64,000 bases of DNA from Styela clava. Taxonomy: Eukaryota. Shown here one piece after another: positions 28,635 through 54,945 of the stretch. A model generated the notes under the pieces. It was not told where the DNA came from. It searched no databases and worked only from the letters and a program-made list of their open reading frames with translations. The number at the start of each line of letters is the position of its first letter. The stretch's first letter is position 1. The position numbers were made by a program, and so were the translations under genes. The stretch spans positions 10,416,001 to 10,480,000 of the forward strand of contig NC_135258.1 in assembly GCF_964204865.1 (NCBI RefSeq), written 5' to 3'.

Positions 28635-30428
28635 CTACTTGTTTATTCGTCTTGGCAGATAACTTTGCGTTCCAGATGACAACTGTTGATTGATTTTTCT
28701 TGAGTCATAAAAGTTGATTAGCGAAGATCCGTAAGGATATCTTTTCCACCAGTCCGCGTTAAGAGCATTTGAAGAAGTATATGGTGGTGGTGGTAACGAA
28801 ATCGGAAAATTATTTCCCCATGTATGATAGAAACCAAATATTGGCGTCTGGGTTAATAATTTGGAATTAACGTTGATTTCAGTATTTGACATCGCCTGAT
28901 GTGCAGCAGAATCAGAGTTTTTCGCCAATAGCTGTGAAAACAAGTAAGTATAAATTTATGTAAGAATTATTCAAATCAAAGCGAATTTGTATTGGAGTTG
29001 GAACTTGTCTCTCACCTTCTCTATTGTTCTAATAATGTCATCATCACATCCGTTCAACGTTTCCAGTATTTTGCTTGGAAGAACTGTTGGAAATGTTTGG
29101 ACCAGTACCCGGAACTTTCTGTAGAACAAAATAATGATATTCAATACAAGAAACTACTTTGGAGATTTCAACGTGATAAATTTAATTGTTCTAAATTCCA
29201 AAACATAAATAAGTCAGATTCAGATCCGACATAAAAAAAACTTTCAAAAGCTTCGAAAACGTTTTAAATCCGAGAGTGGTTTTATCGTGGTTATTATTGG
29301 TCATCGTCAGTAATGAATAAAAGCAATGCTCAAGTATATGAACACGAATGTCAAAACATTACTGCGATGTCAGCAAAATTGAGGGGGGGGGGGGGGATTC
29401 GTAGTTCCACTTCGTGGCCAATAAGCTTATAGCCCCGGTGGCAACTGCGGGTAGATATAAAAGGCTGTGAATAATTGCAGCACTAACCTTGATGTTGAAT
29501 TATCATTTGAATCAAAAATATGTGCAATGTCCAATTTTGCTGCATTCTTGGCTTGATTGTTGAATTTAGAACCAGCTCTCAATGGAGTAGAGTGTAGAGG
29601 AGAAATTCGGTCACGCACGTCCTCGGAGCTATTTGAATGTTGTTGTGGAGTCGAGACATCGCTACTGTTCGGGGAGAATGAGAAGCATCCAGAGCTCGTG
29701 GCATCACTTTTGTTTTCTATTTGAATCTCTTCGGAGTGATTATCACTAGGGTTTTTGGTCTCTCTATCTTGTTCTCCGACAGTGTTCTCAGATGCTAGTG
29801 GATGGTAACACTCTTCGGTTTTAACCCTTTTTGATGCTGTTGAAATATCAAGAATTGTTTTAAACGCCGATAATTTTATCAATAGCACAAGATGTTTAGG
29901 ATAGTATATTCACCTTGCATAACTTGAGTGCGTTCTGGGAATAAGTTTCGTTTCCCATTGATCAATCTTGATTCTTGAGCCTGTTGTCGACGAAGTGCAA
30001 CCTGGAATATATAAATGAATTAGTTGGGATTTATGTTGGTGCTATATACATTGCAACCCTACTGCGAATTTATGCTAATTCCAACTTACTTGAGCAGCCA
30101 TGACTCTTTGTCTTTCTGCAATCAAGTTACATTTTATGCATTCGCAATTCTTCCATTTGCAAAACCGTTTATGGCCTTTTAAAATACTGATTTCGCCGTG
30201 ATTTCGACACCTGTAAAATGTTAAATATTTTCAAATATTTCATTCGCCAATTGGCTTCGAAGTAAAAACGTTCCAACGTGACACCTACCTTGCGCATTTC
30301 GGCGCTCTGCTCTGTAGCACACTTTGGTCTCTTGATACACTGGCTTGAGATGAATGGTGTGTGAAATAATACTTCGACCCAATAGGTAAAGCGTAAGAAA
30401 TCGTTTGCTGCTTGCGTTTAGAATCCAT
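28635..30428 (-). CDS. dmrt: DMRT transcription factor (DM + DMA domain), copy A, intact
   Basis: Exons 30428-30289, 30210-30090, 30001-29914, 29836-29488, 29118-29016, 28931-28635. DM: RAPKCAR|[40 protein letters not shown]|[13 protein letters not shown]: [32 protein letters not shown]. Confidence 0.93.
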
Positions 30429-30617
30429 ATTTTTCATAAGCTCCGCTGATTTGATGATGTGTTTACTTTATGCTAATGATGAATTGACGTGCTACTGAAT
30501 CTGATTGCCTCTTATAATGAATTTTCAACGGTTTTCTTATATTTATATCTGTAACATAGTAATTATTTTTTCTGGTTATCTCTATATTACGAAATAAAAC
30601 AAATATGTCTACAAAAT

Positions 30618-30810
30618 GTATTGTTCACTAATTATCTTCGCTTCCATTTAACAAAAACAGTTTGTAATACAACTGATAAGAACTATTACAGAGTCCATGC
30701 TTTTGTTAAAACTAATTCCTGTGACACGCGATTAATTGTATTGTTTGTTTGTTTACTTTATTAAGAATGATTTTAGCGTTTTACAATATCCACGCGACTT
30801 GTTTCCGCTT
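30618..30810 (-). promoter_or_regulatory. Conserved dmrt upstream module (copy A)
   Basis: On the minus strand: GGAAACAAGTCGCGTG...AAAGTAAACA...TAATCGCGTGTCACAGGAATT...CTTATCAG...AATGGAA...GATAATTAGTGAACAAT. Confidence 0.75.
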
Positions 30811-33608
30811 AATATATCTTGTATATTTTTAGAAAATTGGACATCGAATTAATTAGCAGTTGTTCTAAATAAACTACAGTTCAGCATTATGAGCAAAATA
30901 TTGTCAGTTGCTGGAAATCTTTTATTTCGTTTTGTTCTGTTAGGGGTTGGAAATGCCATTCTTTTTTATTCTCAAGAGTCAAGACAGTCTTCACATTTCA
31001 ATTACAACTTTTAAATCACTTGTGAAAATATTACAACTATTACCTAATTACTATTTAGATTTAGTCCATAAAAACAATTCACTCCGAAAGGAAATCAGTT
31101 AGGTATCTTCGGATTGGAAATTTCCGCAACAATTTTTGTTGCACACATTTTCGAGATAATTACATATAACTTTCATCTCCGAAAACCTCGTAAAATCACA
31201 GGATAATATTAAGCGGAAGTAGTTCACGTGTTCATTTCCCAACATTAATATTGTTTACTTACCAAAGTAAACAATCAAACAACCATATATATGTCACAGG
31301 AATTCGTTTTAACAAAGTGAAGATCTCGATTAAACGTTATCAATTGTTTTGTCTCTGTACCGGGGGGGTGGCCACAAGGGCAGCCGCCCCGAGCAGCAGG
31401 TTGTAGGCTTCGTGCTATTACTTATTACACATTTTTTTCTCGATGTGTTTGAATTTAATTGAAAAACGACATTACAAGTCTTGTGAAACTGATTGCGTGA
31501 CGGTGAATCAGCAATGGCTAACTGCCTTTCCCGACAAAGTTCTCGTCTGGTCATTGCGTGATTTAGCGAAGTCGATGATGCTTTCTTTTTAATTCTCTGT
31601 CATTTTTATGTATAACAACATCTATGATTTGTTTATCCCCCGCATCATTTTCGAAGTTAGGTATAAGGGACATCATTATCAGAAACTCGCACTGGAAAAA
31701 AGAGAAGTTCGGCACGGCGCTGCTCTAGCCTCAAAGTACTGAAGTAAATGAAAGAAAACAAATGAATTGTAAAATTGTATAAATATAAAATGTTTACAGC
31801 AGGAGTAACAAAAGTATTACAAGTATATATAATTGATCCGAAACATGCTTCTGGAATCTACCAAGATTTCGTCAACGACATGTAGCCTATTTTTGATGCA
31901 TGGCCTTTCATCCTAACACCGTTTGAATAATTCATTTGTATCTTCTTTTTATCAGACTTCCACGCCGTTAAAATTTAGCTTTACTCATTGGAGTGGTTGC
32001 TTTTTATCTGCAACGTTTTCGCGCCCTGAGATTCTTTCAAGGAACTCCGTGTTTGGGTATTGTCTTTTAACGAATGATTTTAAAAAAAATATATTATAAC
32101 CAAATGTTACGAATCTCATTTCAAGCATTTGCTATGTTATTATACGCATCACCAGTTGGTGCTAATTTATTTCTTCAAATGTATCAGGGGTTGCTTATCT
32201 GCGCGTACTTGATTTTGGGTGTAAATTATTGCTTGCTATCTTTCTGTTGTTTGGGCAAATTCGTATACAATAAGTAAAAAATTCGAAGCTACAAGAAAAA
32301 TTGATAGGGCTATGAAAAAGTTATGATGCGATAATCAAGAGATTGTTAAGGCCACGCATTCGTGATGCATTGAAAATTTTTTATCGAAGGTCTATTTTAA
32401 GAGCAGGAAAAAATTTGGTAAAAAGGTGAAAGATACCTGAGTCACTTGTCTTTTTGTTCAAATATATTATTTATTACGAACACAAAAATAAATGAAATAT
32501 TGAAATAAGTAAAAAAGGAATATTGAAAATTATTTGATATATACATTATTTTGTCTCACATTTCTCTGTTTTTCGGGTGAAGAGGATATATTTATATGTA
32601 GCCTACACCCGCACGGTTGAACCCATACGTACAATTTTAACTAAGTATACAAAAAGTTAAAGTAACATTTCAACATAACAACCACAAGTACATATAAGAT
32701 ATGACATGTGAGATCTTCACGACAATTTTTAAGTATGTGGGTGAGTAATATCTTCCCGAATAGAAGAATATTCAAAAACTTTACTAGACAATTTCTTCGA
32801 TATTTTGCATATTTTCACTTGGTGGTGAAATTCAATTTCTCGAATATTAAAAGTAGGCAACAGCAGCTTCACGCGAAATAAGAATTTTGTTGGATATCGT
32901 GAAACAGCGATAAATTCTTTAATAAAGTAAACATTTACACAAAAGAATTAATCTTGTGTCACCGGAAAATATATAATCAAGAATAATAATATCAACGTTT
33001 TGTGTGTTATCAGTAACTTCGCAAGTTATCTCGAAGCAGATAGTTAATGGAATTTAATGAAGATTTATTGTATTGAACGATGAATAATTAATTTTAAATA
33101 ATTTTGAATCACTAAAAAACAGTAATGTTTATTGCAATCATGCGCTAGACAAAAATTATTTTCAAACTGTCTACAAGCTACAAAACAACTATATTAATAT
33201 TTTCAATAATTGAAAGCAAAATAAATTATGAAGACTATATATCAGAAGCAATGGATAAGTCTTTGCCGGAAGTATACAATTCATTAAACACAATAACACA
33301 AGACAAGTGTGCGAAGGATTACCGTACATTTCGGGTAAAGTTGTCTCTTTAAACACAAAAGTTATTTTGCCCAGCATAAATCCGTCTTCTGTAATTGATT
33401 GACCCTAACCACCACTCACAATTATACTAAATCAGAAGAAGTCAACTGTTTGTAAATTCAAAGGGGAAAATTTGAAAAAAATTGACAATATAAGTTTACC
33501 TCATGTTTAAATTTTGAAGGCGTTAGTTGCTGAAAATATTTTTAAGTTCAAATACCAACCACCTTCAAATACTTTTCCATTTTTCAAGAAATTGTCTGTT
33601 GTATTTTG

Positions 33609-33800
33609 TGGAAACAAGTCGCGTGGTCGTTGTAACGCGCCACAATGTTCTTATTAAAATAAACAAACAAACAATGGAAATAATCACGTGTCACCGGAAT
33701 TTGGTTTGCTAAGAGGAAAAGCTCGGTTATATTTGTTATCAGTTGTTTAACAAATTGTTTTCGTTAAATGGAAACGAAGATAATTAGTGAACAATGCATT
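33609..33800 (+). promoter_or_regulatory. Conserved dmrt upstream module (copy B)
   Basis: Same ordered motifs as the other copies. Confidence 0.75.
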
Positions 33801-33973
33801 TCGCAAGCCTTTTGTTTTATTTTGCAATATGAAGATAATCGAGATAATGAATATTATTTCACGGATATAAAACAGCAGATGTAAATCTTAGGAGTCAATT
33901 AGTTTCAGAAACTCTTCGATAGATCATCGCTAAAGAGCAACATAGGATTAAATCAGTGAAAGTTATTAAAAAT

Positions 33974-35790
33974 ATGGATTCTATCCGTCAGCAACAAATG
34001 TCGCCTTTCCTATCAGATCGCCGTATGAGTTTACTAGGATTGAAAGTCAAGCCATTGCATCAAACGACCAAAGTATCGTAGGCCTACGGAGCAGAGCACC
34101 AAAGTGCGCAAGGTAGCTGTGGTTTTAAGAGTTTGTTGGTGGAGAACGAATAGTTGGGCAATAAACATAATGAATTAATATTTACATTTCACAGATGCAG
34201 AAATCACGGCGAAATCAATGTTTTGAAAGGTCATAAACGTTTTTGTGAATGGAAGAATTGCGAATGTGTGAAATGTAACTTGATTGCAGAAAGACAAAGA
34301 GTTATGGCTGCTCAAGTAAGTTCAAGTTGACCTTAAAACCTTAAAGTAGCTTTGCGACAAACATTGTACCAACACATATTCCAACTAATTCCTTCCAATA
34401 TTCCAGGTTGCACTTCGGCGACAGCAGGCTCAAGAATCAAGACTGGTCATCGAGAAACGAGACTTGATTCCAGGATCTACGGAAGTTATGCAAGGTGAAT
34501 ATTCTGCTTAAAGTAACAAAATTATCGCTCCAGAAGTATGTGTACCAATATGGAGGTACCTAATTTTGTTTGCCTACTTTACATCAAGTTGTGTAAAGGG
34601 ACGGGAGCATATAGGCAGGGGGTATATTCACTTGGCTAACACAAGCAGTCCCCGAAGTCGTAATAGAACTAAATAAGGGAAAATCGGAATGAAATTATTG
34701 GTTGACCCTAACCTGGTACACATACTACGGGAGTACCCAAAATTCTGATATAAATAAATATAGAACTCATGGATATTGTTTTGGTATTTATATAGCATCA
34801 AAAAAGATCAAAACCGAAGACTATATACCTCCACTAACATCCGAAAAGCTAGAGGTGGATACCAACAACACCGCTGAGAAAAATTTCGAAGAGTGCCAAA
34901 GAGAAAACAAAAGTGATACTACAAGTTCTGGATGCTTCTCGTTTTCCCCAAGCAGTAGTAAAGTTTCGACACCGCAAAAATACTCGACGAGTACGGTTGA
35001 TAATTTGTGTGACCGAATTTCACCTGTTCATTCTAGTCCTGTGAAAGACTCAATTGGGGAAAGAAATTCAGAAACAAAGTCGGATGTCCCCAAAGATAAC
35101 TCAATTAGAAGGTGAGTACCGGAAATAAAATATTACTTTAGTTTGGTAGTAAAATAACTTTGTCATATCATTGTCTAACTTAAAATCTGCTAATCGACGA
35201 ATTCGTAACTCATTCGAAAAGTTTTAGTTTGACTAAGTTTTTATCAAGATAGAGGTATATATGTCAAAATATCCAAGATCGAATTTTTTATATTTGTTCA
35301 TGTTGCTTTCATATACAGAAAGTTCCATGTACTGATTCAAGCATTTCCAACAATTCTTCCAAGTACAATACTCGAAACATTGAACGAATGTGATGCTGAC
35401 ATTATCAGAACAATATAAAAGGTGGAGACTAAATCAAATTTTAATAAAAATTCGCACTTCCCAACCCGTTTCTTTCAACAATTTATATTTTTTTTGCAGT
35501 TATTGGAGAAGAAATTAGCTTCCATACCACAACAAGCGATACTATATAAGGATAACAATGTCTATTCAAGAGTCTCACCTCATACACCAAAACTTGATAC
35601 ATATCAAGCACTGAGAAGTAATTTTCCGATATCGTTACCAACAACGTTGACTCCTGCAAATGCTTTCCAAGCAGACATGTGGAGATATCCGTACGGATCA
35701 CCGCTATCAAATTATTATGTCACAAGTCGCATCAATCAAGATTTCTTTTCTGGAACAAAATGTTTTTTGCCAAGCTTACTGAATAATTAA
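33974..35790 (+). pseudogene. dmrt: DMRT copy B: full exon set but frameshifted and carrying a nonsense codon
   Basis: Exons 33974-34112, 34195-34315, 34407-34494, 34796-35111, 35319-35421, 35500-35790. A 4-bp deletion near 34003 relative to copy C gives TAG at 34079 before the DM domain; TAA at 35416-35418 in the DMA exon. Confidence 0.85.
34525..34737. mobile_element. Longer member of the GG...CC MITE family in dmrt B intron 3
   Basis: GCTCCAGAAGTATGTGTACCAA ... CTGGTACACATACTACGGGAGTACC; flanks CAAAATTA / CAAAATTC; absent from the same intron of copy C (~40390). Confidence 0.75.
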
Positions 35791-37739: not shown

Positions 37740-38484
37740 TAACTTCAAGATAATAACTGGTGGTTGATGTTTCTTGTGCCACAGATGTTGATTTGTGGAG
37801 ACCCGTACCGCAAGGAGATATCAGGATATCTTTCCCACCAGTTCGCGTAGTTAGCATATGTAGAAATATATTTTGTTGAAGGCTTAAGAAAGTAAATCAT
37901 ATTTGTGGTTTGAACCAGCATCTAGTCGCTTCCATGGTTGGGATAACGTAATCGTTACATTCGTTCAATGTTTCAAGTATTGTACTTGGAAGAATTGTTG
38001 GAAATGTTTGAACCAGTACATGGAACTCTCCATATATGAATTTAGTCACAGCTTGAATTTTGAGTATATATATAAGCTGGAAGTGATGGCGGGGACTGTA
38101 GGACTGGCGAGAGGAAGTTTGGTGAAACGACAATATTTTGATGCACATACTTCCATGTTCAATTTTATTAGATTCGGAAACGGTGAAATATTGGATTTTG
38201 TTTCCTCTGCGTCTTAGTATCTTACTTTAAAACAAGCTCTTCAGTATAAAGTGTAGGGGAGAAATATTTCGATCATACATATCCTCAGATGTACTCAAGT
38301 GTTTGTGGGGATTCTGTTCGTAGTTAATGAGAAGCATCCTGAGCTGGTAGCCCTATTTTTGTTTTCTATTTGAATTTCGTCGAAGTGTCTATCCACGAGG
38401 TTTTTAGTTTCTATTTATTGTTTCTTGTCAATATTCCCATACGTTAGTGGCTGATAATTCTCACCAAATATAAATTTTTCGATA
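37740..38484 (-). pseudogene. dmrt: DMRT relic psi1 (exons 4-6 only, most like copy A)
   Basis: Remnants of [31 protein letters not shown] and WWERYP; no DM exons. Confidence 0.8.
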
Positions 38485-39486
38485 CTGCAAAAATATGAAA
38501 AAATTGTTCATTGAACTCATACACTTATTGTATCGCAATGTGTTCATTTACAACTACGTAGTCAAAAAGTGAAACTTACATTTCAACATTTGCAAGAAAA
38601 TATTGTGAGATAATCACAACTATTTTCAATCATGTGAGTGGAATATGGATGAGAAAATATAAGGAAGGAATTATTAGAAAATTTTTACTTTATATTGCAT
38701 ATTTTCACTAGGTATTCATAATTTCTCAAATTGCAAAAGTACAGGCAACAGCAGCTGTACATGAAATAGAGGTCGTATTAGATGTCGTAAAACAGCGACA
38801 AAGTCCTTAATAAAGTAAATATTTGCACAAAATAAATAATCTTGTGTCACCGGAAAATATATAATTGAAAATTATAATAACAACATATTACATGTTATCA
38901 GTAAATTTGCAAGTTATCTCAAATCAGATAAATGATGATATGTAATGACGGTGTATTGTGTTTATCAATAAATAATTAATTATTCAATAATTGTTAATCA
39001 GTAACAAGCACTAGTGTCCATTGGTGTCATGCGCTGGACAAAAACTATAATTGAACAGTCTACAAACTACATGTCAACTATATTAATAGTTTCAACAATT
39101 TGAAATTCAATTATGTCGACTAGGGATCAATATTAATAGATAGATTTTCACTAAACACAATAAGACAAGAAAAATTTATGAAGGTTAACGGACATTTCGT
39201 GCAAGTTGTCACCTCTAGACACAAAATGTATCTATTCCAGCCTAAATTCGTCTTCTCTAATTGATTTACTTTGATCACAAGCACAACTTGCAATTATACC
39301 AAACAAAATTAAGTCAACTGTTTGTAAACTTAAATAAAATTTGGAAAAATAATTAATAATATAAATTTGCCTTATTTTTTTAATTTTAGAGACTTTAGTG
39401 GATTAAAAATATTATTGAGTGTAAATGCTAACCAAATTTAAATACTTTTCATTTTCGCTTTTCAAGAAATCACCTGGTGTATTTTG

Positions 39487-39675
39487 CGGAAACAAGTCGC
39501 GTGTTCGTTGTAACGCACCGAAATTGTCTTATTAAAGCAAACAAGCAAACAATGGATTTAATCACGTGTCACAGGAATTTGGTTTAATAACAGGAAAAGC
39601 TCGGTTATATTTCTTATCAGTTGTTTAACAAATTGTTTTCGTTAAATGGAAACGAATATAATTAATCAACAATGC
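39487..39675 (+). promoter_or_regulatory. Conserved dmrt upstream module (copy C)
   Basis: GGAAACAAGTCGCGTG...TAATCACGTGTCACAGGAATT...CTTATCAG...AATGGAAAC...AACAATG. Confidence 0.75.
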
Positions 39676-39849
39676 ATTCTGCAAGCCTTTTGTTTTATTT
39701 CGTAATATGGAGATAATCGAGAAATGATTATTATTTCACGGATATAAAACAGCAGATGTAAACGTTAGGAGACAATTAGTATCAATAACTTTTCGATACA
39801 TCATCACTATAGAGCAGCATAGAATCAAATCATTGGAATTATTAAGAAT

Positions 39850-41387
39850 ATGGATTATATCCGTCAGCAACAAATTTCGTATGCTTTTCCAATCAGATCG
39901 CCGTATGAGTTTCGAGAGATGGAAAATCAAGCCATTCCATCAAACGACCAAAGTATTGTACGGAGCAGAGCACCAAAGTGCGCACGGTAGGTGATGTGTT
40001 AAAAAAAATTTAGCTGGAGAACCAATATTTGGGCGATAAACATAATGAATAAATTTTTTAAAATCACAGATGTAGAAATCACGGCAAAATCAATGTTTTG
40101 AAAGGTCACAAACGTTTCTGCAAATGGAAGACTTGCGAATGTGTGAAATGTAACCTGGTTGCAGAAAGACAGAGAGTTATGGCTGCTCAAGTAAGTACAA
40201 ATTGATTTAATCTCAAAGTAGCGTTGCAACACATATTGTACCAACACATAAACCAATTAATTCTATCCAATATTCCAGGTCGCACTTCGGCGGCAACAGG
40301 CTCAAGAATCTAGATTGATCATCGCGAAACGACACTTGATTCCAGAATCTACTGAAGTTATGCAAGGTGGATATTCTATTTAAAATGTCAAAATCTTGCT
40401 ATAAATATAGATATTTTATAACTAATGTTTTGGCATTTCTGTAGCATCAAAAAAGATCAAAACCGAAGACTATGGATGTCTACTAACACCCGAGAAACTA
40501 GAGAAGGATACTAACAACACCGGGGTGAAAAATTTCGGAGAGTGCCAAAAAGAAAACAAAAGTGATGCTACAAGTTCTGGATGCTTCTCGTTTTCCCCAA
40601 ACAGTAGTGAAGTTTCAACACCGCAAAATTACTCGACGAGTACGGATTTGTGTGACCGCATTTCACCTGTTCATTCTACTCCTGTAAAAGATGGTTTCAA
40701 TTCAATTATGAAAAGTAATTCATCAACAAAGTCGGATGTCCCCAAAGATAACTCAATTAGACGGTGAGTACCGGAAATAAAATTATATTTTAGTTTGAAG
40801 AATTCATAACCTATCCGATAAGTTTTACATTGGCTAAGTTGAAGAAGAAAATGAAATGTATATACGAGGATATCGAAATATCCAAGATCGGATTTTTTAC
40901 ATTTTTGTTTGTTGCTTCCATATACAGAAAGTTTCATGTACTGATTCAAGCATTTCCAACAATTCTTCCAAGTACAATACTCGAAACATTGAACGAATGT
41001 AATGATGACATTATCAGAACAATAGGAAAGGTGTGAGACTTATTCAAATTTTAATAAAAATTCGCACTTCCCAACCCGTTTCTTTCAACAATTTATACAT
41101 TTTTGCAGTTATTGGAGAAGAAATTAGCTACCATACCACAACAAGCGATACTATATAAGGATAACAATGTCTATTCAGGGGTCGCACCTCATACACCAAA
41201 ACTTGATACATATCAAGTACTGAGAAATAATTTTCCGATATCGCTACCAACAACATTGACTACTGCAAATGCTTTCCAAGCAGACATGTGGAGATATCCG
41301 TACGGATCACCGCTATCAAATTATTATGTCACAAGTCGCATCAATCAAGATTTCTTTTCTGGAACGAAATGTTTTTTGCCAAGATAA
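39850..41387 (+). CDS. dmrt: DMRT copy C, intact
   Basis: Exons 39850-39986, 40070-40190, 40279-40366, 40445-40763, 40928-41030, 41109-41387; all DM Cys/His ligands present; DMA domain present. Confidence 0.93.
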
Positions 41388-43319: not shown

Positions 43320-44030
43320 ATATAATGCTTGTCAATATTACATAATTAAAGACTTATGTAACTAGTGGTGGTATCCAGGGGGTTTGCACGTTCTTGGAGT
43401 GAGATGATCATCATCCATCCCGTTCTTGAGCTGAAGACTAATGTAATATTTGTCATTTCGAATGTAATGTATTAGATCAAATTAAAGCGTGCCATGTTAA
43501 TGTACGCAGAGACATGATTTAGTAAATAGGATGTAGGGTTATTGGGCTATAACTTTGGCATAGTTTTTTTTTCAGATGAGGTAACCGATGGCGAATTCGA
43601 TACTAGAGAGAACTTGTTTATAAACTTCGGAATCCCACCACTCTATGTTCATATAAATTACGTTTTTCATTGGTCAGATTTGATTCTTGAGCTTGATATC
43701 TACGTAGGGAGTGCCACCTAAAATAAATGTAAGTATATTATATATAAATAAACTTGTTAAGATATATGCAAATGGAACTAACGAAATTAGTTAAATTGAA
43801 CTTACTTGGGCAGACATAACTCTTTGTCTTCCTTTTCACTAAAACCATTGTAACATTGAGACATGAAAAAAAATAGCACATTTACCCATCTTGCGCACTT
43901 TGGTGCTTTGTTTTAAATAAATTACTATGGTCGTTTGGTAGACTGCTCTGTCTCACATAACCTGGTAGCTTGTACATTCCACTGGAATAGACGTATTATA
44001 ACTGTTGTTGATAGGAAGCGGTTATGCGTT
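43320..44030 (-). pseudogene. dmrt: DMRT relic psi2 (most of the DM exon deleted)
   Basis: Exon 1 remnant ending APKCA, only RQRVMSAQ left of exon 2, exon 3 remnant ...QAQESNL; colinear with 50430-51730. Confidence 0.8.
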
Positions 44031-44139
44031 GATAAGTTAATGAAACTGATTGTCTTCAACATTTTAAACTATTGCTATATGCGTGAAATCTTAATTTTAT
44101 CTCAATTTATTTCAATTGATAAATAAAACATGATAATTG

Positions 44140-44320
44140 ACATGTTCATTAATTATCTTTAGTTCCATCGAATAGAAACAATATGTAGTACAAGTGATAA
44201 CAATTATAACAAAGACGTTGCTATTGTTAAAATTGAATTCCTGTGACAAGTGATTACTATTGTTGTTTTTGTTTACTTTATAAAATATTGTGTTGTGTTC
44301 ACGCGACCTCGTTTCCTCTT
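44140..44320 (-). promoter_or_regulatory. Conserved dmrt upstream module in front of psi2
   Basis: TGATAAC, AATTCCTGTGACA, TGTTTACTTT and CACGCGACCTCGTTTCC retained. Confidence 0.65.
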
Positions 44321-45464: not shown

Positions 45465-45645
45465 GGAAACGCGGTCGTGTGAGCACGACGAAATATATGT
45501 TAAAGTAAACAAGTGAACAATAGGACTAATCGCGTGTCACAGGAATTCAATTTTAACAAAGGTAGGATCTTCGTAATATTTCTTATCAGTTGTTTTACAA
45601 ATTGTTTTTTGTTAAATGGAAACGAAGATAATTAGTGAACAATGC
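45465..45645 (+). promoter_or_regulatory. Conserved dmrt upstream module (copy D)
   Basis: AAAGTAAACA 45502, CAGGAA 45540, CTTATCA 45582, GAACAATG 45637; TATA-like sequence ~45715. Confidence 0.75.
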
Positions 45646-45807
45646 ATTTCGTCAAACTTTATTTCATTTTATAATTGCGATAAACGAAGAAAAAATTTAG
45701 ATAACACGCATATATATATAAGAACAGTTTGAATTATAATGGACAAATCGTAGCTTGTCAATACATTACTATTACACTGAAAAAAAATTCTTTAGAATTT
45801 TTGAACT

Positions 45808-47412
45808 ATGGATACTTTCCATGTACAGCAGTTGCCATACGTGTATCCCAGTGGAATCTACAAGAATAACGGACATGTGAGTCAAAGCAGTCTACCAAAC
45901 GATCAAAGTAATGTACCCAACAGAGCACCAAAGTGCGCAAGGTAAGTAAACTGTTTTCTATTTTCTATTAACTATGCCGAAATGTTGGACCTGTTTCATT
46001 AAAAAAATCTTGAATCTACAGGTGTCGAAATCATGGTGAAATCAATGTTTTGAAAGGTCATAAACGATTTTGCAAATGGAAGAATTGCGAATGTGTCAAG
46101 TGTAACTTGATTGCAGAAAGACAAAGAGTTATGGCTGCTCAAGTATGTTCGATTAATTCAATTTTTTAGTTCTTGTTTATATCATAACACATCTTTTGTT
46201 TACTTAAATATACATTTTTATATATTGTAGGTGGCACTACGTCGACAACAAGCTCAAGAATCGAATCTAATCAATGCAAAACGTTTTAATTTATATGCAG
46301 AGTGCACTGACGTTGTGCAAGGTTACTATTTTTTTTATCTTGTATGAATTTTTGCCAATAAATTTACAGCAAAATTCATCATTCCAATATATCTTCACAG
46401 AACCCAAGCGAATCAAGATTGAAAGAGAATTTTTCACGCCGACATTTGATAAGACTTGTATGGATTCGCACTTGGATAAGAACAGTGCTTGGACGGAAAT
46501 AACCAATAAATGCAAAACCACAAATAACAGTGATACAACTTCAGGATGTTTCTCATTATCTCCGACCAGTGATGCCTCGACTACTCCAGATTACTCGAGC
46601 ACAGTTAATGATAAATTTGGCCACGTTTTGCCAGTTCATTCTACTCCAGTGAGAAATTTTCCCAAACTAGGCCAAAGAGATAATTTGGAAATAGAACGAG
46701 ACAACTCATCCTACATTGAACCCTGTGAAAATTCAATAAGGAGGTAAGTTCATAGAAAATATCATATTAAAATTCTGGATAGTGCGATTAACGATTGCCA
46801 ATGACGAAGGATTATGTATATTCTAATATTTTTTGATATCTCGTTCTTTTTATTGCAGAACGTTCCAGGCATTGGTTCGAACATTTCCAACAATTCTTCC
46901 AAGTACGATTCTTGAAACATTGAACGAATGTGATGATAATGTTATCAAAACAATGGAAGAGGTGAGGAAACGCACGCTGTTTGAATATTTAAAGTTAATA
47001 TGTAAACTTCAAAAAAAAATCTATAAAAACTAGTTAATGTATCAATTAATGTATTTTCTATAATCCAACTCTTCGAGATGAAATTTGTTTAATACTAATT
47101 TGATTTATACTCAGTTTTTTTATTTCCACAATCAGCATTGCAAAACCTCTAACATGAATTGACTTTAATTTTTTTCAACAGTTATTGAAGAAAAGATCTT
47201 ACTCAACAGAGTCACTGGTTACAGAAAATGCAAATTCTAAAGTATTTTCTCGCCTACCAAAGCAGTTTTGTTACCCGCAATTGCTGAGCTATAATTCACC
47301 AGTTTTACCAACGGCGTTCAACCCATCGAGTTTTTTCCAGACAGACTTGCTGAAAAGATATCCATATGTTCCTTCATATATCAACCCCTTTTCAAATGTT
47401 CAAAAAAATTGA
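45808..47412 (+). CDS. dmrt: DMRT copy D, intact
   Basis: Exons 45808-45941, 46022-46142, 46231-46321, 46401-46743, 46859-46961, 47182-47412; DM and DMA domains intact. Confidence 0.93.
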
Positions 47413-48019: not shown

Positions 48020-48590
48020 ATATATCATTGTTTAACTTAAAATCTGCTAATTGACGAATTCATAACTTCTACGAAAAATTTTGTTTGGTTAAGTCTTTAC
48101 CGACGGAAATGTATTTTCATCGAAATATTCAAGGTATGGTTATACATTTGTTTTATGTTGCTTCCATATACAAATAGTTCCATGTGATGATTCAAGCCTT
48201 TCCAACAATTCTACCAAGTACAATACATTTAACGAATGGGATGATGACGTGAGGGACGAATGGGATGAAGAACAAGAGAAAAGGTGACAGATACTACTGC
48301 AGACAGTGATACTATTAAGATTTATTTATATTATTGCTTTATTTTAATTTTTTTTTTTTAATTGTACTCTATTTTATGTGTTTTCCACTGTTTTTTCTTT
48401 ACACAAATATAAAGAAAAAAAAAAGACAGTCCAGTAATTCATATAGGAGAGAAGGTGAATTGCTTGAAGTCTACTCAGTGTACACATACAACAAAGAAAG
48501 CACTATTCTAAGTTCCTATAGAAAACAATAATTAATGAATAATGATTTACTTGTGAGTTGTGTATTACTATGCTCTAATAACCACCTTCT
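48020..48590 (+). pseudogene. dmrt: DMRT fragment of B/C type (intron 4, part of the DMA exon, 3' UTR)
   Basis: Matches 35166-35400, then jumps to the 3' UTR sequence seen at 35852-36120. Confidence 0.75.
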
Positions 48591-48779
48591 ATATTGACAA
48601 ATCAATTTTAAATTTTTAGTACCGGTACTCGAAATTGAAAGAAGTCACTTGAAGACTGTGACTTTCTTTGATTTTACTATGGGGCCCATTATATCTTGGA
48701 AACGCTGTTTAGATGATATTTAGAATGTTATCTTTCAACAATCGGCTGGAATAATTTTGCTGACATTGCGATATTTGAG

Positions 48780-49140
48780 CATTATTCTCCGTTTGTCTGT
48801 TAGATACACGCGATATCTCACGAAAACGAGGTTGAATCTGCTCCAAATTTTGCTTGTGCATTCATCATATCTCGGACTAGAAGCCTATCGATTGGATGAA
48901 TTATGTCGTATAATTAGCGAGTCATTAATTAATTAGTGATGAAAAGATCTAGATTTTTGCAAAACGAGAGAACGTGTATTGTCTAGATTTTTGAGGCTAG
49001 AGCGCGCATGTGATGAGTGTGTGTGTGCGATGCGCAAGTTTCCATCGAGAAAGTTTCCACGCTATTGAGTCAGAGCGAAGGATACACGCCGCTAGATCTA
49101 TCTATAAGTCGACGATATCTGATCGCTATCTCGTTATTTT
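48780..49140 (+). repeat. Probable non-autonomous interspersed repeat (Helentron/DINE-1-like style)
   Basis: CCGTTTGTCTGTT...GATATCTC...CCAAATTTTGC organisation; absent from paralogous blocks; only one copy in this window. Confidence 0.3.
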
Positions 49141-49799
49141 CTTGTTAGAAATTTTAGCTTTATATTTCATTCAGCAATACCTAGCTACCCAATAGACATT
49201 GAACTTTCTGGTAAAATCAATATTTCAAACGTTCTGAAGTTTAGTGACACATTCAAAACTTTGGATTTAGTGACAGATTCGAAACTAAACCAAATAATAC
49301 GTTTATCATTTATTAATTTTGTGGCGAAAAGCCCGGCAGTCGCCCTCAGAGATCGAAGTCGACTTGTTTTTAAATTTGGGTAGCATTCTAAATTTTGGTA
49401 AATACATGGGTGGATGACTTGGTGCATTTGCACTCATTGAAATATATAGTTTTTAATGACTTATGCGTCCATTGGGGGGGGGATTTTTTTTTTTTACAAA
49501 GAATGACAGTCGTTCTGTTATTAAGGCCTATGTTGTTATATTTATCACTATGATTGTTGGTAACTGTTCTGGATGCTTTGTATTACCTGTTCATATCAAA
49601 TAATATTTATTTTATACAAAAAATGTGATTTAAACACAAAAATATAAGTAAGTAAATGACAAAGGGGAGACGAAAATAGATACTTTTTTAAAATTGTAAA
49701 TGAACTTTGTAGGTGTATCTTTCTGTCTTTCGCTTCCTGTTGTGTTCATTTGCGTCATCCACACAACTTTGTATTCAACTCAGGCCGTGTTTTTTATAC

Positions 49800-51726
49800 C
49801 TGACTCCGTTGAAAATTTGAGTAAGGGTTGGATAAATGAAAAAGCATATGGTTATCTTGCCAACAATATCTTGCCTGTCTGAAAGGAACTTGAAGGAGTG
49901 GATGTTGTTGATGGCAGAACTGAAAAATTATATCCAAATGAATAAGAAGCGTTAAACTGATTTGGCATCCAAGCAAACGCTTTGTAATAGGCATTTCCTG
50001 TATCCAGTTACATTTTTGGTGAAGTAGTTCTTTTCTTCAGTAACTGTGAGTGAAAGAAATTTAATTAATGCAAAATAATGATTGTATATGATTTCTTTTG
50101 AATAGGATGAAGCCATTTCTGATCCGAAACAATTTTTAACAAAACGGATATCACAAGTTATAAAAAGTACATATATTAAATTTCCGATTTACAAAGTTCA
50201 TATTTTAATTTTTCTGTAGCATTTGCAAAAAGTCCGGAGAGAGTCCGATTGTAATCCACTGTCATAAAGTATGGGAGTATTTTATGTGTTATCTGATTAC
50301 ATGACCTGAAATTTAACTCGCGACTCTGATCATAACTCATGTTTCCATAGTTAAATTTGTTTCATTACGATAGTCTGGGAAAGCTCGCGTTTTCTCACCT
50401 TTTTCATTGTTTTGATGACAGTTTTCCTTTATATAATGCTTCTCAGTAGTGCATGATTAAAGAGCTATGTAACCAGTGGTGACATTCAGGGGGTTCGCAC
50501 GTTCTTGAAATGACGTGACTATCATCGAACCCGTTCCTGAGCTGAAGACTAATGTAATATTCGGCATTTTGAAAAGTAATGTATTATATCGAATTAAAGC
50601 GTGCCATGTTAATGTAGCTTACGCAGAATCATAAATTAGTAAATATGGTGTTTAGGTATAGGATTATAAGTTTGGCATAGTTTTATGAAATATGGGAACC
50701 TGGAGCGAGTTCTATACCAAAGAGAACCTGTTTTTAAACTACTGAATCGCACCACTGTATGTAACCATACATTTCATAAAACGTTGATTACATGTCTATC
50801 TAGAGTTTTAGTATATGGATTTCTTTTAATTTACCTCTTCAACGAATATCCACAAGCTTCAGTGAATGCTTTGGCCTCTTGTTCCGTATCCACATTCTCT
50901 CTCTCGTCTAATTTGGAGAGATTTCTCACTGAAGTAGAATGAATCGGGTGATCTCGGTCACATTCATCTTTAACGGTGCTTGGGCAATTTGGAGGAATCG
51001 CGACGTCACTGTTACTAGGACACTGTTATTTGTAGTTTGACCTTGGCTTATCCTTTTGACGTCATCATTGGTAATATCGAAATTTGTATCGGCACGAGTC
51101 ATTTCGAATATTGGAGTACGAAAATCATTCTCGATGACGATTCTTTTGGATTCTGTGAATATATACAGAAAATTAAATAGTATAGTTGAAGGTAAAATGC
51201 TAACCTCGAAAAACTTATTTGTACTCTTCATATAAATTGCGTTTTGCATTGATCAGATTAGATTCTTGAGCTTGTTGTCTACCAGTGCCATTAAGCTTAA
51301 TATGTAAATAAATGTAAGTATAAAAAAATATATAAGTTGTTATGATGTATACAAATGGAACCAACGAAATTAGTTTAATTGGACCAACTTGAGCAGCCAT
51401 AACTCTTTGTCTTTCTGCACTCAAGTTAAATTTTACACATTGGCAATTTTTACATTTACAGAACCGTTTGTGACCTTTCAAACGCGAATTTCGCCTCGAT
51501 TTTGACATCTGCGAAGTTTTAAAATACTTTTATTGAAACCATTGTAGCATTTAGGCACATAAAACGAAAATTGCACATTATGTCATATCACTCACCTGGT
51601 GCACTTTGGTGCTAAGTTGGAAACATCACTATGATTGTTTGGTAGACTCTGGCTCACACACCCTGGAAGCTTGTAGATTCCACTGGGATAGATGTATGAT
51701 AACTATTGTTGTTGGGAGGCATGCAT
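49800..51726 (-). pseudogene. dmrt: DMRT relic psi3 (D/E type; all exons recognisable)
   Basis: ATG at 51726 with TAG at codon 8; CRNHG changed to CQNRG followed by a frameshift; exon 5 end at ~50400; exon 6 from ~50043 with stops. Confidence 0.85.
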
Positions 51727-51814
51727 AGTTCAGTGTTTTTGAAATAATCTGATAAGTTAATGAAATCTTAATTTTATCTCAATTTATTTCAAATGATAAA
51801 TAAAACAAAAGAAT

Positions 51815-51992
51815 TCAATTGTTCAGTAATTACCTTCGGTTCCATCGAACAGAAACAATATATAGTGCAGATGATAACAATTATAACGAAGATGTTGCTA
51901 TTGTTAAAATTGAATTCCTGTGACACGCGATTATTACTATTGTTGTTTACTTTATCAAATATTAAGTTATGTTCACGCGACCTCGTTTCCTC
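51815..51992 (-). promoter_or_regulatory. Conserved dmrt upstream module in front of psi3
   Basis: ATTGTTC, TGATAAC, AATTCCTGTGACACGCGATTA and TGTTTACTTT retained. Confidence 0.7.
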
Positions 51993-53068
51993 TTAATACT
52001 AATATTAATTGTAATTTACTAGTAAAAAATTTATGAACTATGTGAACTGATTGAAATCTTTTAACTTGGTCTAGCCTAGGACATTCTAATCATTGTGAAA
52101 GCATTAGTAGCCTAAACCATGTTCCTTGTAATTGAAAAAAAATTACAAAAACTAAAATATAATACTTCAGACTTTATATTGGTTACGTGTTGAATAAATT
52201 GCTGAATGACGTTATGCATTGCTGAATATATACAATATGAGCTTTGTAAAACAAGGATAAAATCACTAATGAAGTAGAAAAATACATACAAGATTTAATC
52301 GTCATCCATGATTAATCAACTCTATAAACAAATTGTTATCTGTGGTCGATTTCCCGAATTGCCAATCGGAAATGAATTAGCTGTTTCTATCGTTTTTGTT
52401 TATTCCGAGTTGTTCAGTAATAGATAACAGAAAACAATAATGAATCGCATGTGTAACGTATACAGAGGCCATTTAAATTGAATTCATTCAGATTTGTAGA
52501 AAAAATTATTTAGAAATAAATTGAACAAAATCAATGTTCATGCTTTCATATTAAAGTTGTACTAGTTTTTTTAAGAATATGAGCATAATTGCGCTTCTTC
52601 TGCCCAAAAGTTTTTGACAATAATATTTCACAGATAATTAATTACAAATATTTTTAATTGTACTAAACAAATATGCAGCCGGCGCTACTTTATTCGGGAA
52701 ACATGGCTATTGATATTGGCATTCACATATTTTTGTTGATTGAATCTCAGAGGTAACAAAACATTTCATCCCTATTCAAAATTTATTTCGAATGCCATAG
52801 TTAGAAATCTGTTTTGGAACTTATACAGGTATATTTTTAATAACATCAAAAATAGCAATTTGAACGAGAAGCAAGAATACGCAGGCACGCAAAAAAACAA
52901 GTTGATATATTTCTATTACATATTTTGAATTAAAGCTTAGACGATATTAATTAATAAGACGATTAGACGATAATAATAATAAATATTCTATAACTTAACG
53001 TACAAGGTCCAATTATTATAAAAAAGCGTAATGTAGTTTCCTAAAAATGAACGAAATAAGTAATAAAA

Positions 53069-53250
53069 GGAAACGCGGTCGTGTGAGCACGACAAAATAT
53101 TTGTCAAAGTAAACAAGTAAACAATAGGACTAATCGCGTGTCACAGGAATTCAATTTGAACAAAGGTGAGATCTTCGTAATATTTGTTATCAGTTGTTTT
53201 ACAAATTGTTTTTGTTAAATGGAAACGCAGATAATTAGTGAACAATGCAT
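53069..53250 (+). promoter_or_regulatory. Conserved dmrt upstream module (copy E)
   Basis: Nearly identical to the copy D module. Confidence 0.75.
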
Positions 53251-53408
53251 CTCGTCAAACCTTTTGTTTTATTTTATAATTGCGATAAAAGAAGAAAAAA
53301 TTTAGATTATACGCATATATAAGAACAGTTCGGATTGTAGTGGAAAAATCGTAACTTGACGATACATTATTATTACACTGAGTAAAAAACCTTTAGAATT
53401 TTTGAACT

Positions 53409-54945
53409 ATGGATACTTTTCATGTACAGCAATTGCCATACGTAAATCCCAGTGATATCTATAAGAATAAAAGACCTGTGAGTCAAAGCAGTCTACCAAA
53501 CGATCATAGTAATGTACCCAACAGAGCACCAAAGTGCGCAAGGTGAGTAATTTGTTTTCCATTTTTATTTATTATGCCTAAATGTTACAACAGTTTCATA
53601 GAAAAATTTCAAATTTACAGGTGTCGAAATCATGGTGAAATCAATGATTTGAAAGGTCATAAACGATTTTGCAAATGGAAGAACTGCGAATGTGTGAAAT
53701 GTAACTTGATTGCAGAAAGACAAAGAGTTATGGCTGCTCAAGTATGTTCGATTAATTCAATTTTTTAGTTCTTGTTTATATCATAACAAATCTTTTGTTT
53801 ACTATATACATTTATATATAAATTTTAGGTGGCACTACGCCGACAACAAGCTCAGGAATCTAATCTAATTAATGCAAAACGTAATTTATATGCAGAGTAC
53901 ATTGATGTTGTTCAAGGTAAATAAATATTTTATATTGTGTATAAGATTTTGTGAATAAGTTTGTAGCAAGATTTAGAATTGCATTATATATTTACAGCAC
54001 CCAAACGAATCAAGTTTGAAACAGATTTAATCACGCCGACATTTGACAGGACTGGTTTGGAATCGCTCTTAGATAAGAACAGTGCTTGCATGGAGAACTG
54101 CAAAACTACGAATAACAGTGATACAACTTCAGGATGTTTCTCATTATCTCCGAACGGTGATGCCTCGACTACTTCAGATTACTCGAATACAGCTAATGAT
54201 AAATGTGGACAAGTTTTGCCAATTCATTCTACTCCAGTGAGAAATTTTCCCAAATTAGGCCAGAAAGATAATTTGGAAATAGGACGAGACGACTCATATT
54301 ACATTGAATCTTGTGAAAATTCAATGAGGAGGTAGGTTTATACAAAATATTATATTGAAATCCTAGATGTAACTGAATATTGTGTTTCATGTTTTTTAAT
54401 ATCTCATTCGTTTTATTGCAGAACGTTCCAGGCATTGGTTCGAACATTTCCAACAATTCTTCCAAGTACGATTCTTGAAAAATTGAACGAATGTGATGAT
54501 AATGTTATCAAAACAATGGAAGAGGTGAGGAATTAATATGTGACTTCAAATCACAAATCTTTCAATTTATTTAGTTATTGCGATCAAACTCATTTGCAAG
54601 ATGCAAGTTGTTTAAAATACCAATTTGTGATCAAAATCAAGTCAATTTGTTTTTCTTTGCTCACTATCAGCACTATAAAACCCTTTAATATGAATTAACT
54701 TTAATTCTTCTCAACAGTTATTGAAGAAGAGATCTGCTTCCTCAACAGAGTCAGCAAACGCTGAAGCATGTTCTCGCCTACCAAAGCAGTTACCCTGTTA
54801 CCCTGGATTATTGGGATATAATTCAACAGTTTTACCAACATCATTCAACCCATCGACTTTTTTCCAAACAGACTTGCTGAAAAGATATCCCTATGTTCCA
54901 TTATTTATCAACCCCTATTCTAGTGTCCAAAGAAATTTAGTATAA
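53409..54945 (+). CDS. dmrt: DMRT copy E, intact
   Basis: Exons 53409-53542, 53621-53741, 53829-53916, 53998-54331, 54422-54524, 54718-54945; DM and DMA domains intact. Confidence 0.93.

What the first reader, a model, noticed from the sequence alone, without database searches (positions are those of the whole stretch)
28635..54945. Expanded DMRT array organised as four head-to-head pairs
Eight loci share the same six-exon plan: A(-)/B(+), psi1(-)/C(+), psi2(-)/D(+), psi3(-)/E(+), plus fragments at 48.0 and 60.5 kb. All are DM + DMA type (DMRTA-like). Two subfamilies are visible: A/B/C/psi1 and D/E/psi2/psi3. DMRT genes are normally low-copy regulators of sex/germline and anterior neural fate, so a birth-and-death array with four intact diverged paralogues is unusual.
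Basis: partly seen in the sequence, partly recalled or inferred. Interest (0 to 1): 0.85.

Follow-up and report, generated by a model that had tools for sequence, protein, structure and literature searches.

The report
Sea-squirt DMRT gene array
A 26-kb stretch of the Styela clava (sea squirt) genome holds a private family of DMRT-type transcription-factor genes: four intact copies, one freshly broken copy and several wrecks, arranged as four back-to-back pairs. It is a real but fairly ordinary case of gene-family birth and death, and nobody has yet tested where the copies are expressed.

Summary
Window 28635-54945 (Styela clava, contig C10) carries eight DMRT-like loci in four divergent (head-to-head) pairs, plus two fragments.

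- **Intact copies.** A, C, D and E have six GT-AG exons and encode 365/368, 348, 340 and 335 aa. They match NCBI RefSeq models named 'DMRT A2-like' exactly, apart from three extra N-terminal residues in the model for A.
- **Broken copy.** B has a 4-nt deletion in exon 1 and a TAA in exon 5.
- **Remnants.** psi1-3 keep only three to five of the six exons.
- **Domains.** All copies share an intron that splits the DM domain, found nowhere else in the genome. The DMA-like exon scores below Pfam's cut-off, but profile-profile comparison (96%) and a confident three-helix model support it.
- **Relationships.** The family is monophyletic on a very long branch and confined to this array. It is not the one-to-one orthologue of Ciona Dmrt.a, which lies on contig C8. 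It splits into two subfamilies: {A,B,C,psi1,f48} and {D,E,psi2,psi3}.
- **Selection.** dN/dS is 0.30-0.37 and dS is 0.15-1.2, which excludes haplotype artefacts and indicates selection.
- **Regulatory block.** A ~200-nt non-coding block precedes seven loci and occurs nowhere else in the genome.

I found no paper describing the array. Verdict: a real lineage-specific DMRT expansion, a new member of a known kind, of moderate interest.

The parts
28635..30437 (-). Gene A, intact. Exons: 30428(or 30437)-30289, 30210-30090, 30001-29914, 29836-29488, 29118-29016, 28931-28635. Encodes 365 aa, or 368 aa from the upstream ATG.
   Evidence: Identical to XP_039263500.2, which adds MKN at the N-terminus.
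30565..30760 (-). Conserved upstream non-coding block of A
33654..33823 (+). Conserved upstream non-coding block of B
33974..35790 (+). Locus B, a young pseudogene. All six exons and all splice sites are present: 33974-34112, 34195-34315, 34407-34494, 34796-35111, 35319-35421, 35500-35790. It carries a 4-nt deletion in e1, which gives a stop after 35 codons, and a TAA two codons before the end of e5.
   Evidence: B-C dS is 0.147. No protein model for B was found.
37748..38484 (-). psi1, a remnant of an A-type copy. Only e4 (with stops), e5 (both splice sites lost) and e6 remain.
39532..39724 (+). Conserved upstream non-coding block of C
39850..41387 (+). Gene C, intact, 348 aa. Exons: 39850-39986, 40070-40190, 40279-40366, 40445-40763, 40928-41030, 41109-41387.
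   Evidence: Identical to XP_039264316.2.
43651..44025 (-). psi2, a remnant of a D/E-type copy. It keeps e1 (no ATG, an in-frame stop, donor GT changed to AT), only the 3' end of e2, and e3.
44143..44280 (-). Conserved upstream block of psi2, lying in the spacer shared with D
45495..45700 (+). Conserved upstream non-coding block of D
45808..47412 (+). Gene D, intact, 340 aa. Exons: 45808-45941, 46022-46142, 46231-46321, 46401-46743, 46859-46961, 47182-47412.
   Evidence: Identical to XP_039263474.2.
48022..50209 (+). f48: a remnant of a B/C-type e5 (48163-48264; 7-nt deletion, stop, no acceptor) plus B/C-type 3' flank
49825..51729 (-). psi3, a D/E-type pseudogene. It keeps e1 (stop), e2 (three zinc ligands lost), e3 (acceptor AA), e4 (deletion) and e6 (stops). 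No e5 was detected.
51818..51960 (-). Conserved upstream block of psi3, lying in the spacer shared with E
53099..53305 (+). Conserved upstream non-coding block of E
53409..54945 (+). Gene E, intact, 335 aa. Exons: 53409-53542, 53621-53741, 53829-53916, 53998-54331, 54422-54524, 54718-54945.
   Evidence: Identical to XP_039263493.2.
60529..60637 (+). f60: a copy of the last 35 codons of E's e6. It lies inside a 3.4-kb duplication of E's downstream flank (54833-58247 matches 60530-63949).

Best explanation
This is a lineage-specific, tandemly and invertedly duplicated family of DM-domain transcription-factor genes in Styela clava.

**Origin (inferred).** An ancestral DM+DMA gene gained an intron inside the DM domain. 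Shared intron positions make a tunicate DMRTA-type gene the likely ancestor. That gene was copied into a divergent head-to-head pair, and the pair unit was then duplicated to give two subfamilies, each of which duplicated again.

**Current state (shown).** One member of every pair has decayed or is decaying: B, psi1, psi2 and psi3. A, C, D and E remain intact under purifying selection.

**Proteins (shown by sequence).** Each intact protein keeps all eight zinc ligands and an unchanged recognition helix. Each also has a divergent DMA (CUE-like, ubiquitin-binding type) three-helix domain.

**Function (inferred).** The four proteins most likely bind the standard DMRT DNA site and are regulated through DMA-dependent stability. 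They probably differ mainly in their fast-evolving linker and tail regions, and perhaps in expression.

**Regulation (conservation shown, activity inferred).** Each locus is preceded by an array-specific ~200-nt conserved non-coding block, presumably a shared promoter-proximal cis-regulatory module.

Expression, DNA binding, ubiquitin binding, regulatory activity of the block and the biological role were not tested.
For: **Array structure.**
- Eleven DM hits genome-wide, six of them in the array. Only the array hits start at profile position 6-7, because the domain is split by an intron.
- Six-exon GT-AG models for A-E.
- The models are identical to RefSeq proteins of Styela clava.
- Unit-level homology includes the spacers.
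- p-distances define the two subfamilies.
- The lesions of B and of psi1-3 are mapped.

**Domains.**
- DM scores 69-73 bits on e2 alone.
- The DM region matches human DMRT1 (4YJ0) at E 1.4e-27 over residues 43-103.
- e5 hits only Pfam DMA, covering profile positions 6-36 of 37.
- HHalign of the e5 region against 72 canonical DMA segments gives 96% probability and E 4e-9.
- The AlphaFold model has three helices at residues 232-287 with pLDDT 87-97. The top Foldseek hits are UBA/CUE domains.

**Selection and age.** dN/dS is 0.30-0.37 and dS is 0.15-1.2.

**Relationships.**
- The array clade has 100/100 support.
- The non-DM exons occur only in the array.
- The only close database relatives are the four S. 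clava proteins.
- The intron just after the DMA motif (IEK|LL) is shared with the canonical S. clava DMRTA gene on C8 (VIEK|IL) (with P0259).

**Upstream block.**
- It occurs seven times genome-wide, all in the array.
- D versus E in the block differs by 0.05, against 0.20 in the spacer and introns (P = 3e-7).
Against:
- The DMA match is below Pfam's curated cut-off.
- The zinc module of the AlphaFold model has low confidence, and the Foldseek E-values are not significant.
- Placement of the family within DMRT3/4/5 is unresolved, so derivation from DMRTA rests on one shared intron position.
- Within each subfamily the (-) and (+) partners are closer to each other than to same-strand copies of the other subfamily. 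A single ancestral pair therefore needs either gene conversion between the arms or two independent inversions.
- dN/dS of about 0.35 is fairly relaxed for a developmental transcription factor.
Confidence: 0.8

Rival explanations
1. The array is the S. clava set of co-orthologues of Ciona Dmrt.a, the anterior neural plate regulator. On this view it inherited Dmrt.a's Sox/Fox/Ets/Gata regulatory logic, and the copies share or subdivide that early embryonic role.
For: - The AU test does not reject array + (S. clava C8 gene + Ciona Q4H3P8) as one clade (p = 0.435).
- The post-DMA intron is shared.
- Invariant columns of the upstream block contain forkhead-, Sox-, GATA- and ETS-like cores.
- Ciona Dmrt.a is controlled by Sox1/2/3, Foxa.a, Fgf9/16/20 and Gata.a (PMC8189585, PMC10530022).
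Against: - A canonical single-copy orthologue of Ciona Q4H3P8 exists elsewhere, on C8 (LOC120328405). Its DM region and flanks are nearly identical to the Ciona protein.
- The upstream block is absent from that locus and from the rest of the genome at BLAST level.
- Grouping with DMRT3 is not rejected either (p = 0.18).
- The motif matches are read off the consensus only.
Confidence: 0.2
2. The whole array is non-functional or on its way out. The four 'intact' copies are unexpressed relics that have not yet acquired lesions.
For: - Four of the eight loci are already broken.
- The proteins differ by 2.9-7% between the two RefSeq versions, while the canonical gene is unchanged.
- There are no expression data.
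Against: - Four copies keep open six-exon frames, and all 20 introns keep GT-AG, across dS up to about 1.2 with dN/dS 0.30-0.37.
- The DM exon is nearly invariant.
- The upstream block of D and E is constrained (P = 3e-7).
- RefSeq predicts alternative isoforms for C and D, which usually reflects transcript evidence. That last point is an inference.
Confidence: 0.07
3. Assembly artefact: uncollapsed haplotypes or a false duplication.
For: None found. Read depth could not be checked.
Against: - Exon p-distances are 0.11-0.38 and dS is at least 0.15.
- The copies differ in indels, lesions, intron sizes and flanks.
- The copies lie in alternating orientation on one contig.
- All four genes have distinct accessions in two annotation versions.
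Confidence: 0.02

Closest known systems
DMRTA / DMRT4-5 class (vertebrate DMRTA1/DMRTA2, Drosophila dmrt99B, Ciona Dmrt.a = Q4H3P8)
   Same: - DM domain followed by a DMA (CUE-like) motif.
- Identical recognition helix and [10 protein letters not shown] extension.
- The conserved phase-0 intron after MAAQ.
- The best full-length database matches are DMRTA2/A1/DMRT3 proteins, at 33-36% identity over 62-70% of the query.
   Different: - The array sits on a very long branch (stem 2.8 changes per column).
- The DMA motif is below Pfam's cut-off.
- There are three extra introns, one of them inside the DM domain.
- The proteins are short (335-368 aa) with unrelated linker and tail sequence.
- The family is multi-copy and clustered.
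- The true one-to-one DMRTA orthologue is a separate gene on C8.
DMRT3 / dmrt93B class (C. elegans DMD-4, human DMRT3)
   Same: - DM + DMA architecture.
- The DMA domain of this class was shown to bind ubiquitin and control protein stability (PMC7538159).
- The hydrophobic residue at DMA position 31 is kept as Ile in the array proteins (my reading of the sequences).
   Different: S. clava has its own two DMRT3-type genes, on C5 and C9, with strong DMA matches (52-56 bits). They group with DMRT3 at 100/100 support, and the array falls outside that clade in the best tree. The AU test does not reject joining the array to it (p = 0.18).
Other lineage-specific DMRT expansions (11 Dmrt genes in Nematostella, PMC4433094; tandem Dsx2 duplication in a centipede, PMC12562212)
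   Same: Copy number of DM genes raised within one lineage, partly by tandem duplication.
   Different: Here the unit of duplication is a head-to-head pair. Half of the loci are pseudogenes. The family carries its own intron and its own conserved upstream block. The host is a hermaphroditic chordate.

Membership tests
DMRT (DM-domain) transcription factors | DM domain (Pfam PF00751) above the curated cut-off | tested here: met
   e2 alone scores 69-73 bits against a 27-bit cut-off in A-E. Genome scan E-values are 1e-17 to 1e-19. The match to DMRT1 in 4YJ0 has E 1.4e-27.
DMRT (DM-domain) transcription factors | Eight zinc ligands (CCHC + HCCC) and the C-terminal recognition helix | tested here: met
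   All eight ligands are present in A-E once e1 (…KCA) is joined to e2 (RCRNHG…), as read from the translations. The helix [22 protein letters not shown] is unchanged apart from one L-to-V change in C. psi3 has lost three ligands.
DM + DMA class (DMRT3/4/5, 'DMRTA-like') | DMA motif (Pfam PF03474) above the curated cut-off of 23 bits | tested here: not met
   e5 of A-E scores 14.4-19.4 bits (E 8e-4 to 0.03). DMA is the only family hit, and the match covers profile positions 6-36 of 37. In the genome scan only A appears, at 18.7 bits.
DM + DMA class (DMRT3/4/5, 'DMRTA-like') | Homology of the region to canonical DMA domains by a more sensitive test, and a CUE-like three-helix fold | tested here: met
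   HHalign gives 96% probability, E 4e-9 and 41 aligned columns. AlphaFold predicts helices at 232-244, 250-259 and 264-287 with pLDDT 87-97. The top Foldseek hits are UBA/CUE domains, with rmsd 0.6-1.2 Å over 37-44 columns, but their E-values are not significant.
Orthologue of DMRTA2 / tunicate Dmrt.a | Groups with DMRTA2 or Ciona Dmrt.a to the exclusion of other DMRT classes, as the one-to-one counterpart | tested here: inconclusive
   Placement of the array is unresolved. AU tests reject neither a tunicate-DMRTA affinity (p = 0.435) nor a DMRT3 affinity (p = 0.18). The one-to-one counterpart of Ciona Q4H3P8 is the C8 gene LOC120328405.
Birth-and-death tandem gene array | Clustered paralogues of graded divergence, mixed with pseudogenes and fragments, sharing unit-level homology that includes non-coding flanks | tested here: met
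Functional (expressed) genes | Paralogue-specific spliced transcripts | not testable with these tools
The only support is indirect: RefSeq models, with isoforms for C and D.

The most novel reading that the evidence does not exclude
The array is a fast-evolving, Styela-lineage-specific DMRT subfamily that has been given a new developmental or reproductive job in this hermaphroditic chordate. It would be driven by its own private cis-regulatory module. On this reading the head-to-head layout matters: the promoter modules of the dead partners (psi2, psi3) are kept as extra enhancers for the surviving neighbour genes.
Probability: 0.2. Interest if true: 0.6.

Novelty: new member of a known kind. 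Interest (0 to 1): 0.4.

Why it matters
DMRT genes are central regulators of sexual and anterior neural development and are usually few in number. A private four-gene expansion in a tunicate offers a compact natural experiment on how a deeply conserved DNA-binding module is redeployed.

- The DNA-contacting helix is frozen, while the rest of the protein, the intron structure and the regulatory DNA are all new.
- The array also gives a dated series of duplication, inversion and decay events, with dS ranging from 0.15 to about 1.2.
- The ~200-nt conserved upstream block can be tested directly by electroporation in ascidian embryos.

The significance is limited for now. The genes are already annotated in RefSeq, DMRT expansions are known in other phyla, and nothing yet ties these copies to a phenotype or even to an expression domain.

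Tried and rejected
- I replaced it with projection of coordinates through alignments.
- **Joined models.** Exons were searched by reference. Full-length searches used the database proteins P0009, P0010 and P0153, and the alignment A1, which holds the older D version P0154. P0009, P0153 and P0333 equal my models; P0010 equals A plus three N-terminal residues. Joined models were built only inside scripts, for translation, dN/dS and trees.
- **Relatives in other tunicates.** A search with the non-DM part of A found only gene C. A profile of the four proteins found nothing closer than generic DM+DMA proteins. This says little, because few tunicate proteomes are in the database.
- **Phylogenetic placement.** It is unresolved, and the AU tests could not separate a DMRTA from a DMRT3 affinity.
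- **Gene conversion between D and E.** The idea came from the differences between old and new RefSeq versions. It was rejected: no site shows a pattern shared across the paralogues, only singletons.
- **Relaxed selection on B.** Changes polarised with A give 8 non-synonymous to 7 synonymous in B, against 6 to 13 in C. The counts are too small to decide.
- **Foldseek against the PDB.** No hit was significant; the list is merely dominated by UBA/CUE domains.
Full report
**Where we are.** The window is G000:C10:10416001-10480000 of a 377-Mb animal genome. Proteins identical to my gene models are RefSeq entries of Styela clava, a stolidobranch ascidian. The window contains no N.

**Checking the observation.**
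- A six-frame motif scan found DM-domain exons at about 30.1 kb (-), 34.2, 40.1, 46.0 and 53.6 kb (+), and a degraded one at 51.4 kb (-).
- A whole-genome scan with Pfam DM gave 11 matches. Six are in this array. The other five are single loci on contigs C8, C1, C3, C5 and C9.
- Only the array matches begin at profile position 6-7. In every copy the domain is split by a phase-2 intron in the Arg codon of KCA|RCRNHG.
- A blastn self-comparison showed the repeated units and their alternating orientation.

**Gene models.** I projected exon boundaries through alignments of each exon. This gave six-exon models in which all introns are GT-AG.

| Gene | Strand | Length | Matching RefSeq protein |
|---|---|---|---|
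| A | - | 365 aa (368 from an upstream ATG) | XP_039263500.2 |
| C | + | 348 aa | XP_039264316.2 |
| D | + | 340 aa | XP_039263474.2 |
| E | + | 335 aa | XP_039263493.2 |

- The splice structure is therefore independently reproduced.
- RefSeq lists two isoforms each for C and D.
- The finding's end coordinates, 28635 and 54945, are the stop codons of A and E.

**Broken copies.**
- B has all six exons and all splice sites, but two lesions. A 4-nt deletion in e1 gives a stop after 35 codons. A TAA lies two codons before the end of e5. No protein model for B appeared in any search.
- psi1 (-) retains e4, e5 and e6 of an A-type copy, with stops and lost splice sites.
- psi2 (-) retains e1, the 3' end of e2 and e3. 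It has no ATG, an in-frame stop, and an AT in place of the GT donor.
- psi3 (-) retains e1-e4 and e6, with stops, three lost zinc ligands, an AA acceptor and no detectable e5.
- f48 is a B/C-type e5 remnant with about 2 kb of B/C-type 3' flank.
- f60 is the end of E's e6, inside a 3.4-kb duplication of E's downstream flank.
- 'Eight loci with one six-exon plan' is therefore true only as ancestry. Five loci still have all six exons and four are intact.

**Architecture and history.**
- The pairs A/B, psi1/C, psi2/D and psi3/E are all divergent (head-to-head).
- Homology extends through the spacers and flanks. 32639-34522 matches 38552-40394, 34738-37141 matches 40389-42780, 43834-44884 matches 51528-52548, and 45006-47410 matches 52591-54937. 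Whole pair units were therefore duplicated.
Examples: B-C 0.13, D-E 0.11, A-B/C 0.26-0.28, psi3-D/E 0.30, and 0.35-0.38 between subfamilies.
- Within each subfamily the (-) and (+) partners are closer to each other than to same-strand copies of the other subfamily. A single ancestral pair would therefore need gene conversion between its arms. The alternative is two independent inversions. I cannot tell which (inference).
- dS is 0.15 (B-C), 0.23 (D-E), about 0.7 (A-B/C) and about 1.2 between subfamilies.
- Spacer and intron divergence for D/E is about 0.20.
- These values, the different lesions and the presence of all four genes under separate accessions in two annotation versions rule out uncollapsed haplotypes.

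**What the proteins are.**
- e2 alone scores 69-73 bits on Pfam DM. Residues 43-103 of A align to the human DMRT1 DM domain of 4YJ0 at E 1.4e-27.
- All eight zinc ligands and the recognition helix are kept in A-E.
- e5 hits only Pfam DMA. The scores are 14-19 bits, below the 23-bit cut-off, over nearly the whole profile. In the genome scan only A reaches the list, while the C5 and C9 genes score 52-56 bits.
- A profile-profile comparison of the e5 region with 72 canonical DMA segments gives 96% probability, E 4e-9 and 41 aligned columns.
- An AlphaFold model built on a 60-sequence alignment predicts three helices at 232-287 with pLDDT 87-97. The rest, apart from the DM helix, is low-confidence or disordered.
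- The Foldseek list is dominated by UBA and CUE domains, but without significant E-values.
- The DMA domain has been shown to be a CUE-like ubiquitin-binding stability element in DMD-4 and human DMRT3 (PMC7538159). The hydrophobic position 31 is Ile in the array proteins (my reading of the alignment).
- I conclude that these are DM + divergent-DMA proteins.

**Selection.** Pairwise dN/dS among A, C, D and E is 0.30-0.37. The DM exon is almost invariant while the linker and tail evolve fast.

**Relationships.**
- Full-length and profile searches find only the four S. clava proteins as close relatives (at least 278 bits).
- The next hits are DM-only matches and generic DM+DMA proteins, at 33-36% identity over 62-70% of the query.
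- The non-DM part of A finds only C.
- Searching the genome with protein A shows that the non-DM exons exist only in the array.
- In a maximum-likelihood tree the array is one clade (100/100) on a stem of 2.8 changes per column, with D+E at 99/97. Its position is unresolved.
- AU tests reject neither union with the tunicate DMRTA pair (p = 0.435) nor union with the DMRT3 clade (p = 0.18).

**The canonical S. clava genes.**
- The canonical DMRTA gene is LOC120328405 on C8 (P0259). Its DM region and following residues are nearly identical to Ciona Q4H3P8.
- The published Dmrt.a qPCR primers (PMC10530022) translate to LIAERQ and NNRQSP, both present in Q4H3P8. I read this by hand. It implies that Q4H3P8 is Ciona Dmrt.a and that the C8 gene, not the array, is its orthologue.
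- The C5 and C9 genes are DMRT3-type (100/100 support).
- C1 looks DMRT2-like from its DM sequence, judged from my own knowledge of the family.
- C3 is a divergent DMRTA-like gene.

**Introns.**
- The array shares two introns with the C8 gene: the universal one after MAAQ, and one directly after the DMA motif (IEK|LL against VIEK|IL).
- It has three further introns of its own.
- This favours derivation from a tunicate DMRTA-type gene, but it is a single character.

**Upstream block.**
- A roughly 200-nt non-coding stretch, with stops in all frames, lies 100-330 nt upstream of e1 of A, B, C, D, E, psi2 and psi3.
- It occurs exactly seven times in the genome, all in the array.
- Its core differs by 0.16-0.21 between subfamilies, against 0.35-0.38 for the exon windows.
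- D versus E differs by 0.05 against a neutral 0.20 (P = 3e-7).
- psi2 versus psi3 differs by 0.13 (P = 0.02).
- Invariant columns include forkhead-, Sox-, GATA- and ETS-like cores, as another first-stage note (s1-820001) proposed. I checked this only by reading the consensus.
- Ciona Dmrt.a is controlled by Sox1/2/3, Foxa.a, Fgf9/16/20 and Gata.a (PMC8189585, PMC10530022). The resemblance is a lead, not a result.

**What could not be done.**
Exons were searched by reference, and database proteins were used for the full-length searches.

**Literature.**
- I found no paper describing DMRT genes of Styela.
- Clavelina is reported to have a single Dmrta (PMC10950049).
- Four DMRT classes are said to be common to invertebrate bilaterians (PMC6737965).
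- Larger DMRT complements and tandem duplicates are known elsewhere (PMC4433094, PMC12562212).

**Verdict.** It is a lineage-specific DMRT expansion evolving by birth and death. The four intact genes are already annotated in RefSeq, and their function and expression are unknown. I rate it a new member of a known kind, interest about 0.4.

Noticed in passing
window 20428-25845: LTR retroelement. It has 449-nt direct repeats at 20428-20876 and 25398-25845 that are 98.2% identical. Between them lie ORFs of 204-310 aa on the + strand with no clear Pfam match. Another first-stage note (s1-819912) reads it as retrovirus-like. I observed it only.
   Followed up: partly
window 54833-58247 and 60530-63949: A 3.4-kb segmental duplication (79-87% identity) downstream of E. 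It carries the end of E's last exon and two copies of an exon matching the N-terminus of phytanoyl-CoA dioxygenase (PhyH; 57326-57619 and 62939-63220; 21 and 18 bits, just under Pfam's cut-off). The duplication process therefore reaches into the neighbouring PHYH-like gene.
   Followed up: partly
proteins P0151, P0152, P0154, P0332 versus window genes E, A, D, C: The older RefSeq versions (.1) of the four array proteins differ from the present ones by 2.9-7% of residues. The canonical DMRTA gene on C8 kept its version (.1), so its sequence is unchanged. This means either very divergent alleles or copy-number differences between the sequenced individuals.
   Followed up: partly
window 34738-37141 versus 40389-42780, compared with 32639-34522 versus 38552-40394: B and C are much more alike in their 3' halves and flanks (88% overall; e6 95.5%, intron 5 95%) than in their 5' halves and upstream DNA (78-84%). 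This suggests a later conversion or unequal exchange. B's intron 3 also carries a 223-nt insertion.
   Followed up: no
window 39850-39986 (C exon 1); protein P0331: RefSeq isoform X2 of gene C starts from a different ATG in another frame of exon 1. It joins e2 without the first DM cysteine. It is either an annotation artefact or a non-DNA-binding isoform.
   Followed up: no
window 26028-26442: Tandem repeat array with a 16-nt basic unit and 48- and 80-nt higher-order periods, about 25 copies, just upstream of the 3' end of gene A.
   Followed up: no
window 8707-8819, 10199-10316, 17770-17883; also 10953-11342 versus 12271-12655: Short dispersed repeats of about 115 nt, in both orientations, and a 390-nt direct repeat pair at 80% identity. 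They are probably small mobile elements.
   Followed up: no
G000 C5:13130414-13132266 and C9:943485-945087 (L004/L012, L005/L013): S. clava has two DMRT3/dmrt93B-type genes with strong DMA domains. It also has a divergent DMRTA-like gene on C3, whose DM domain has NHN in place of NHG. With the array this makes nine apparently intact DM genes.
   Followed up: partly
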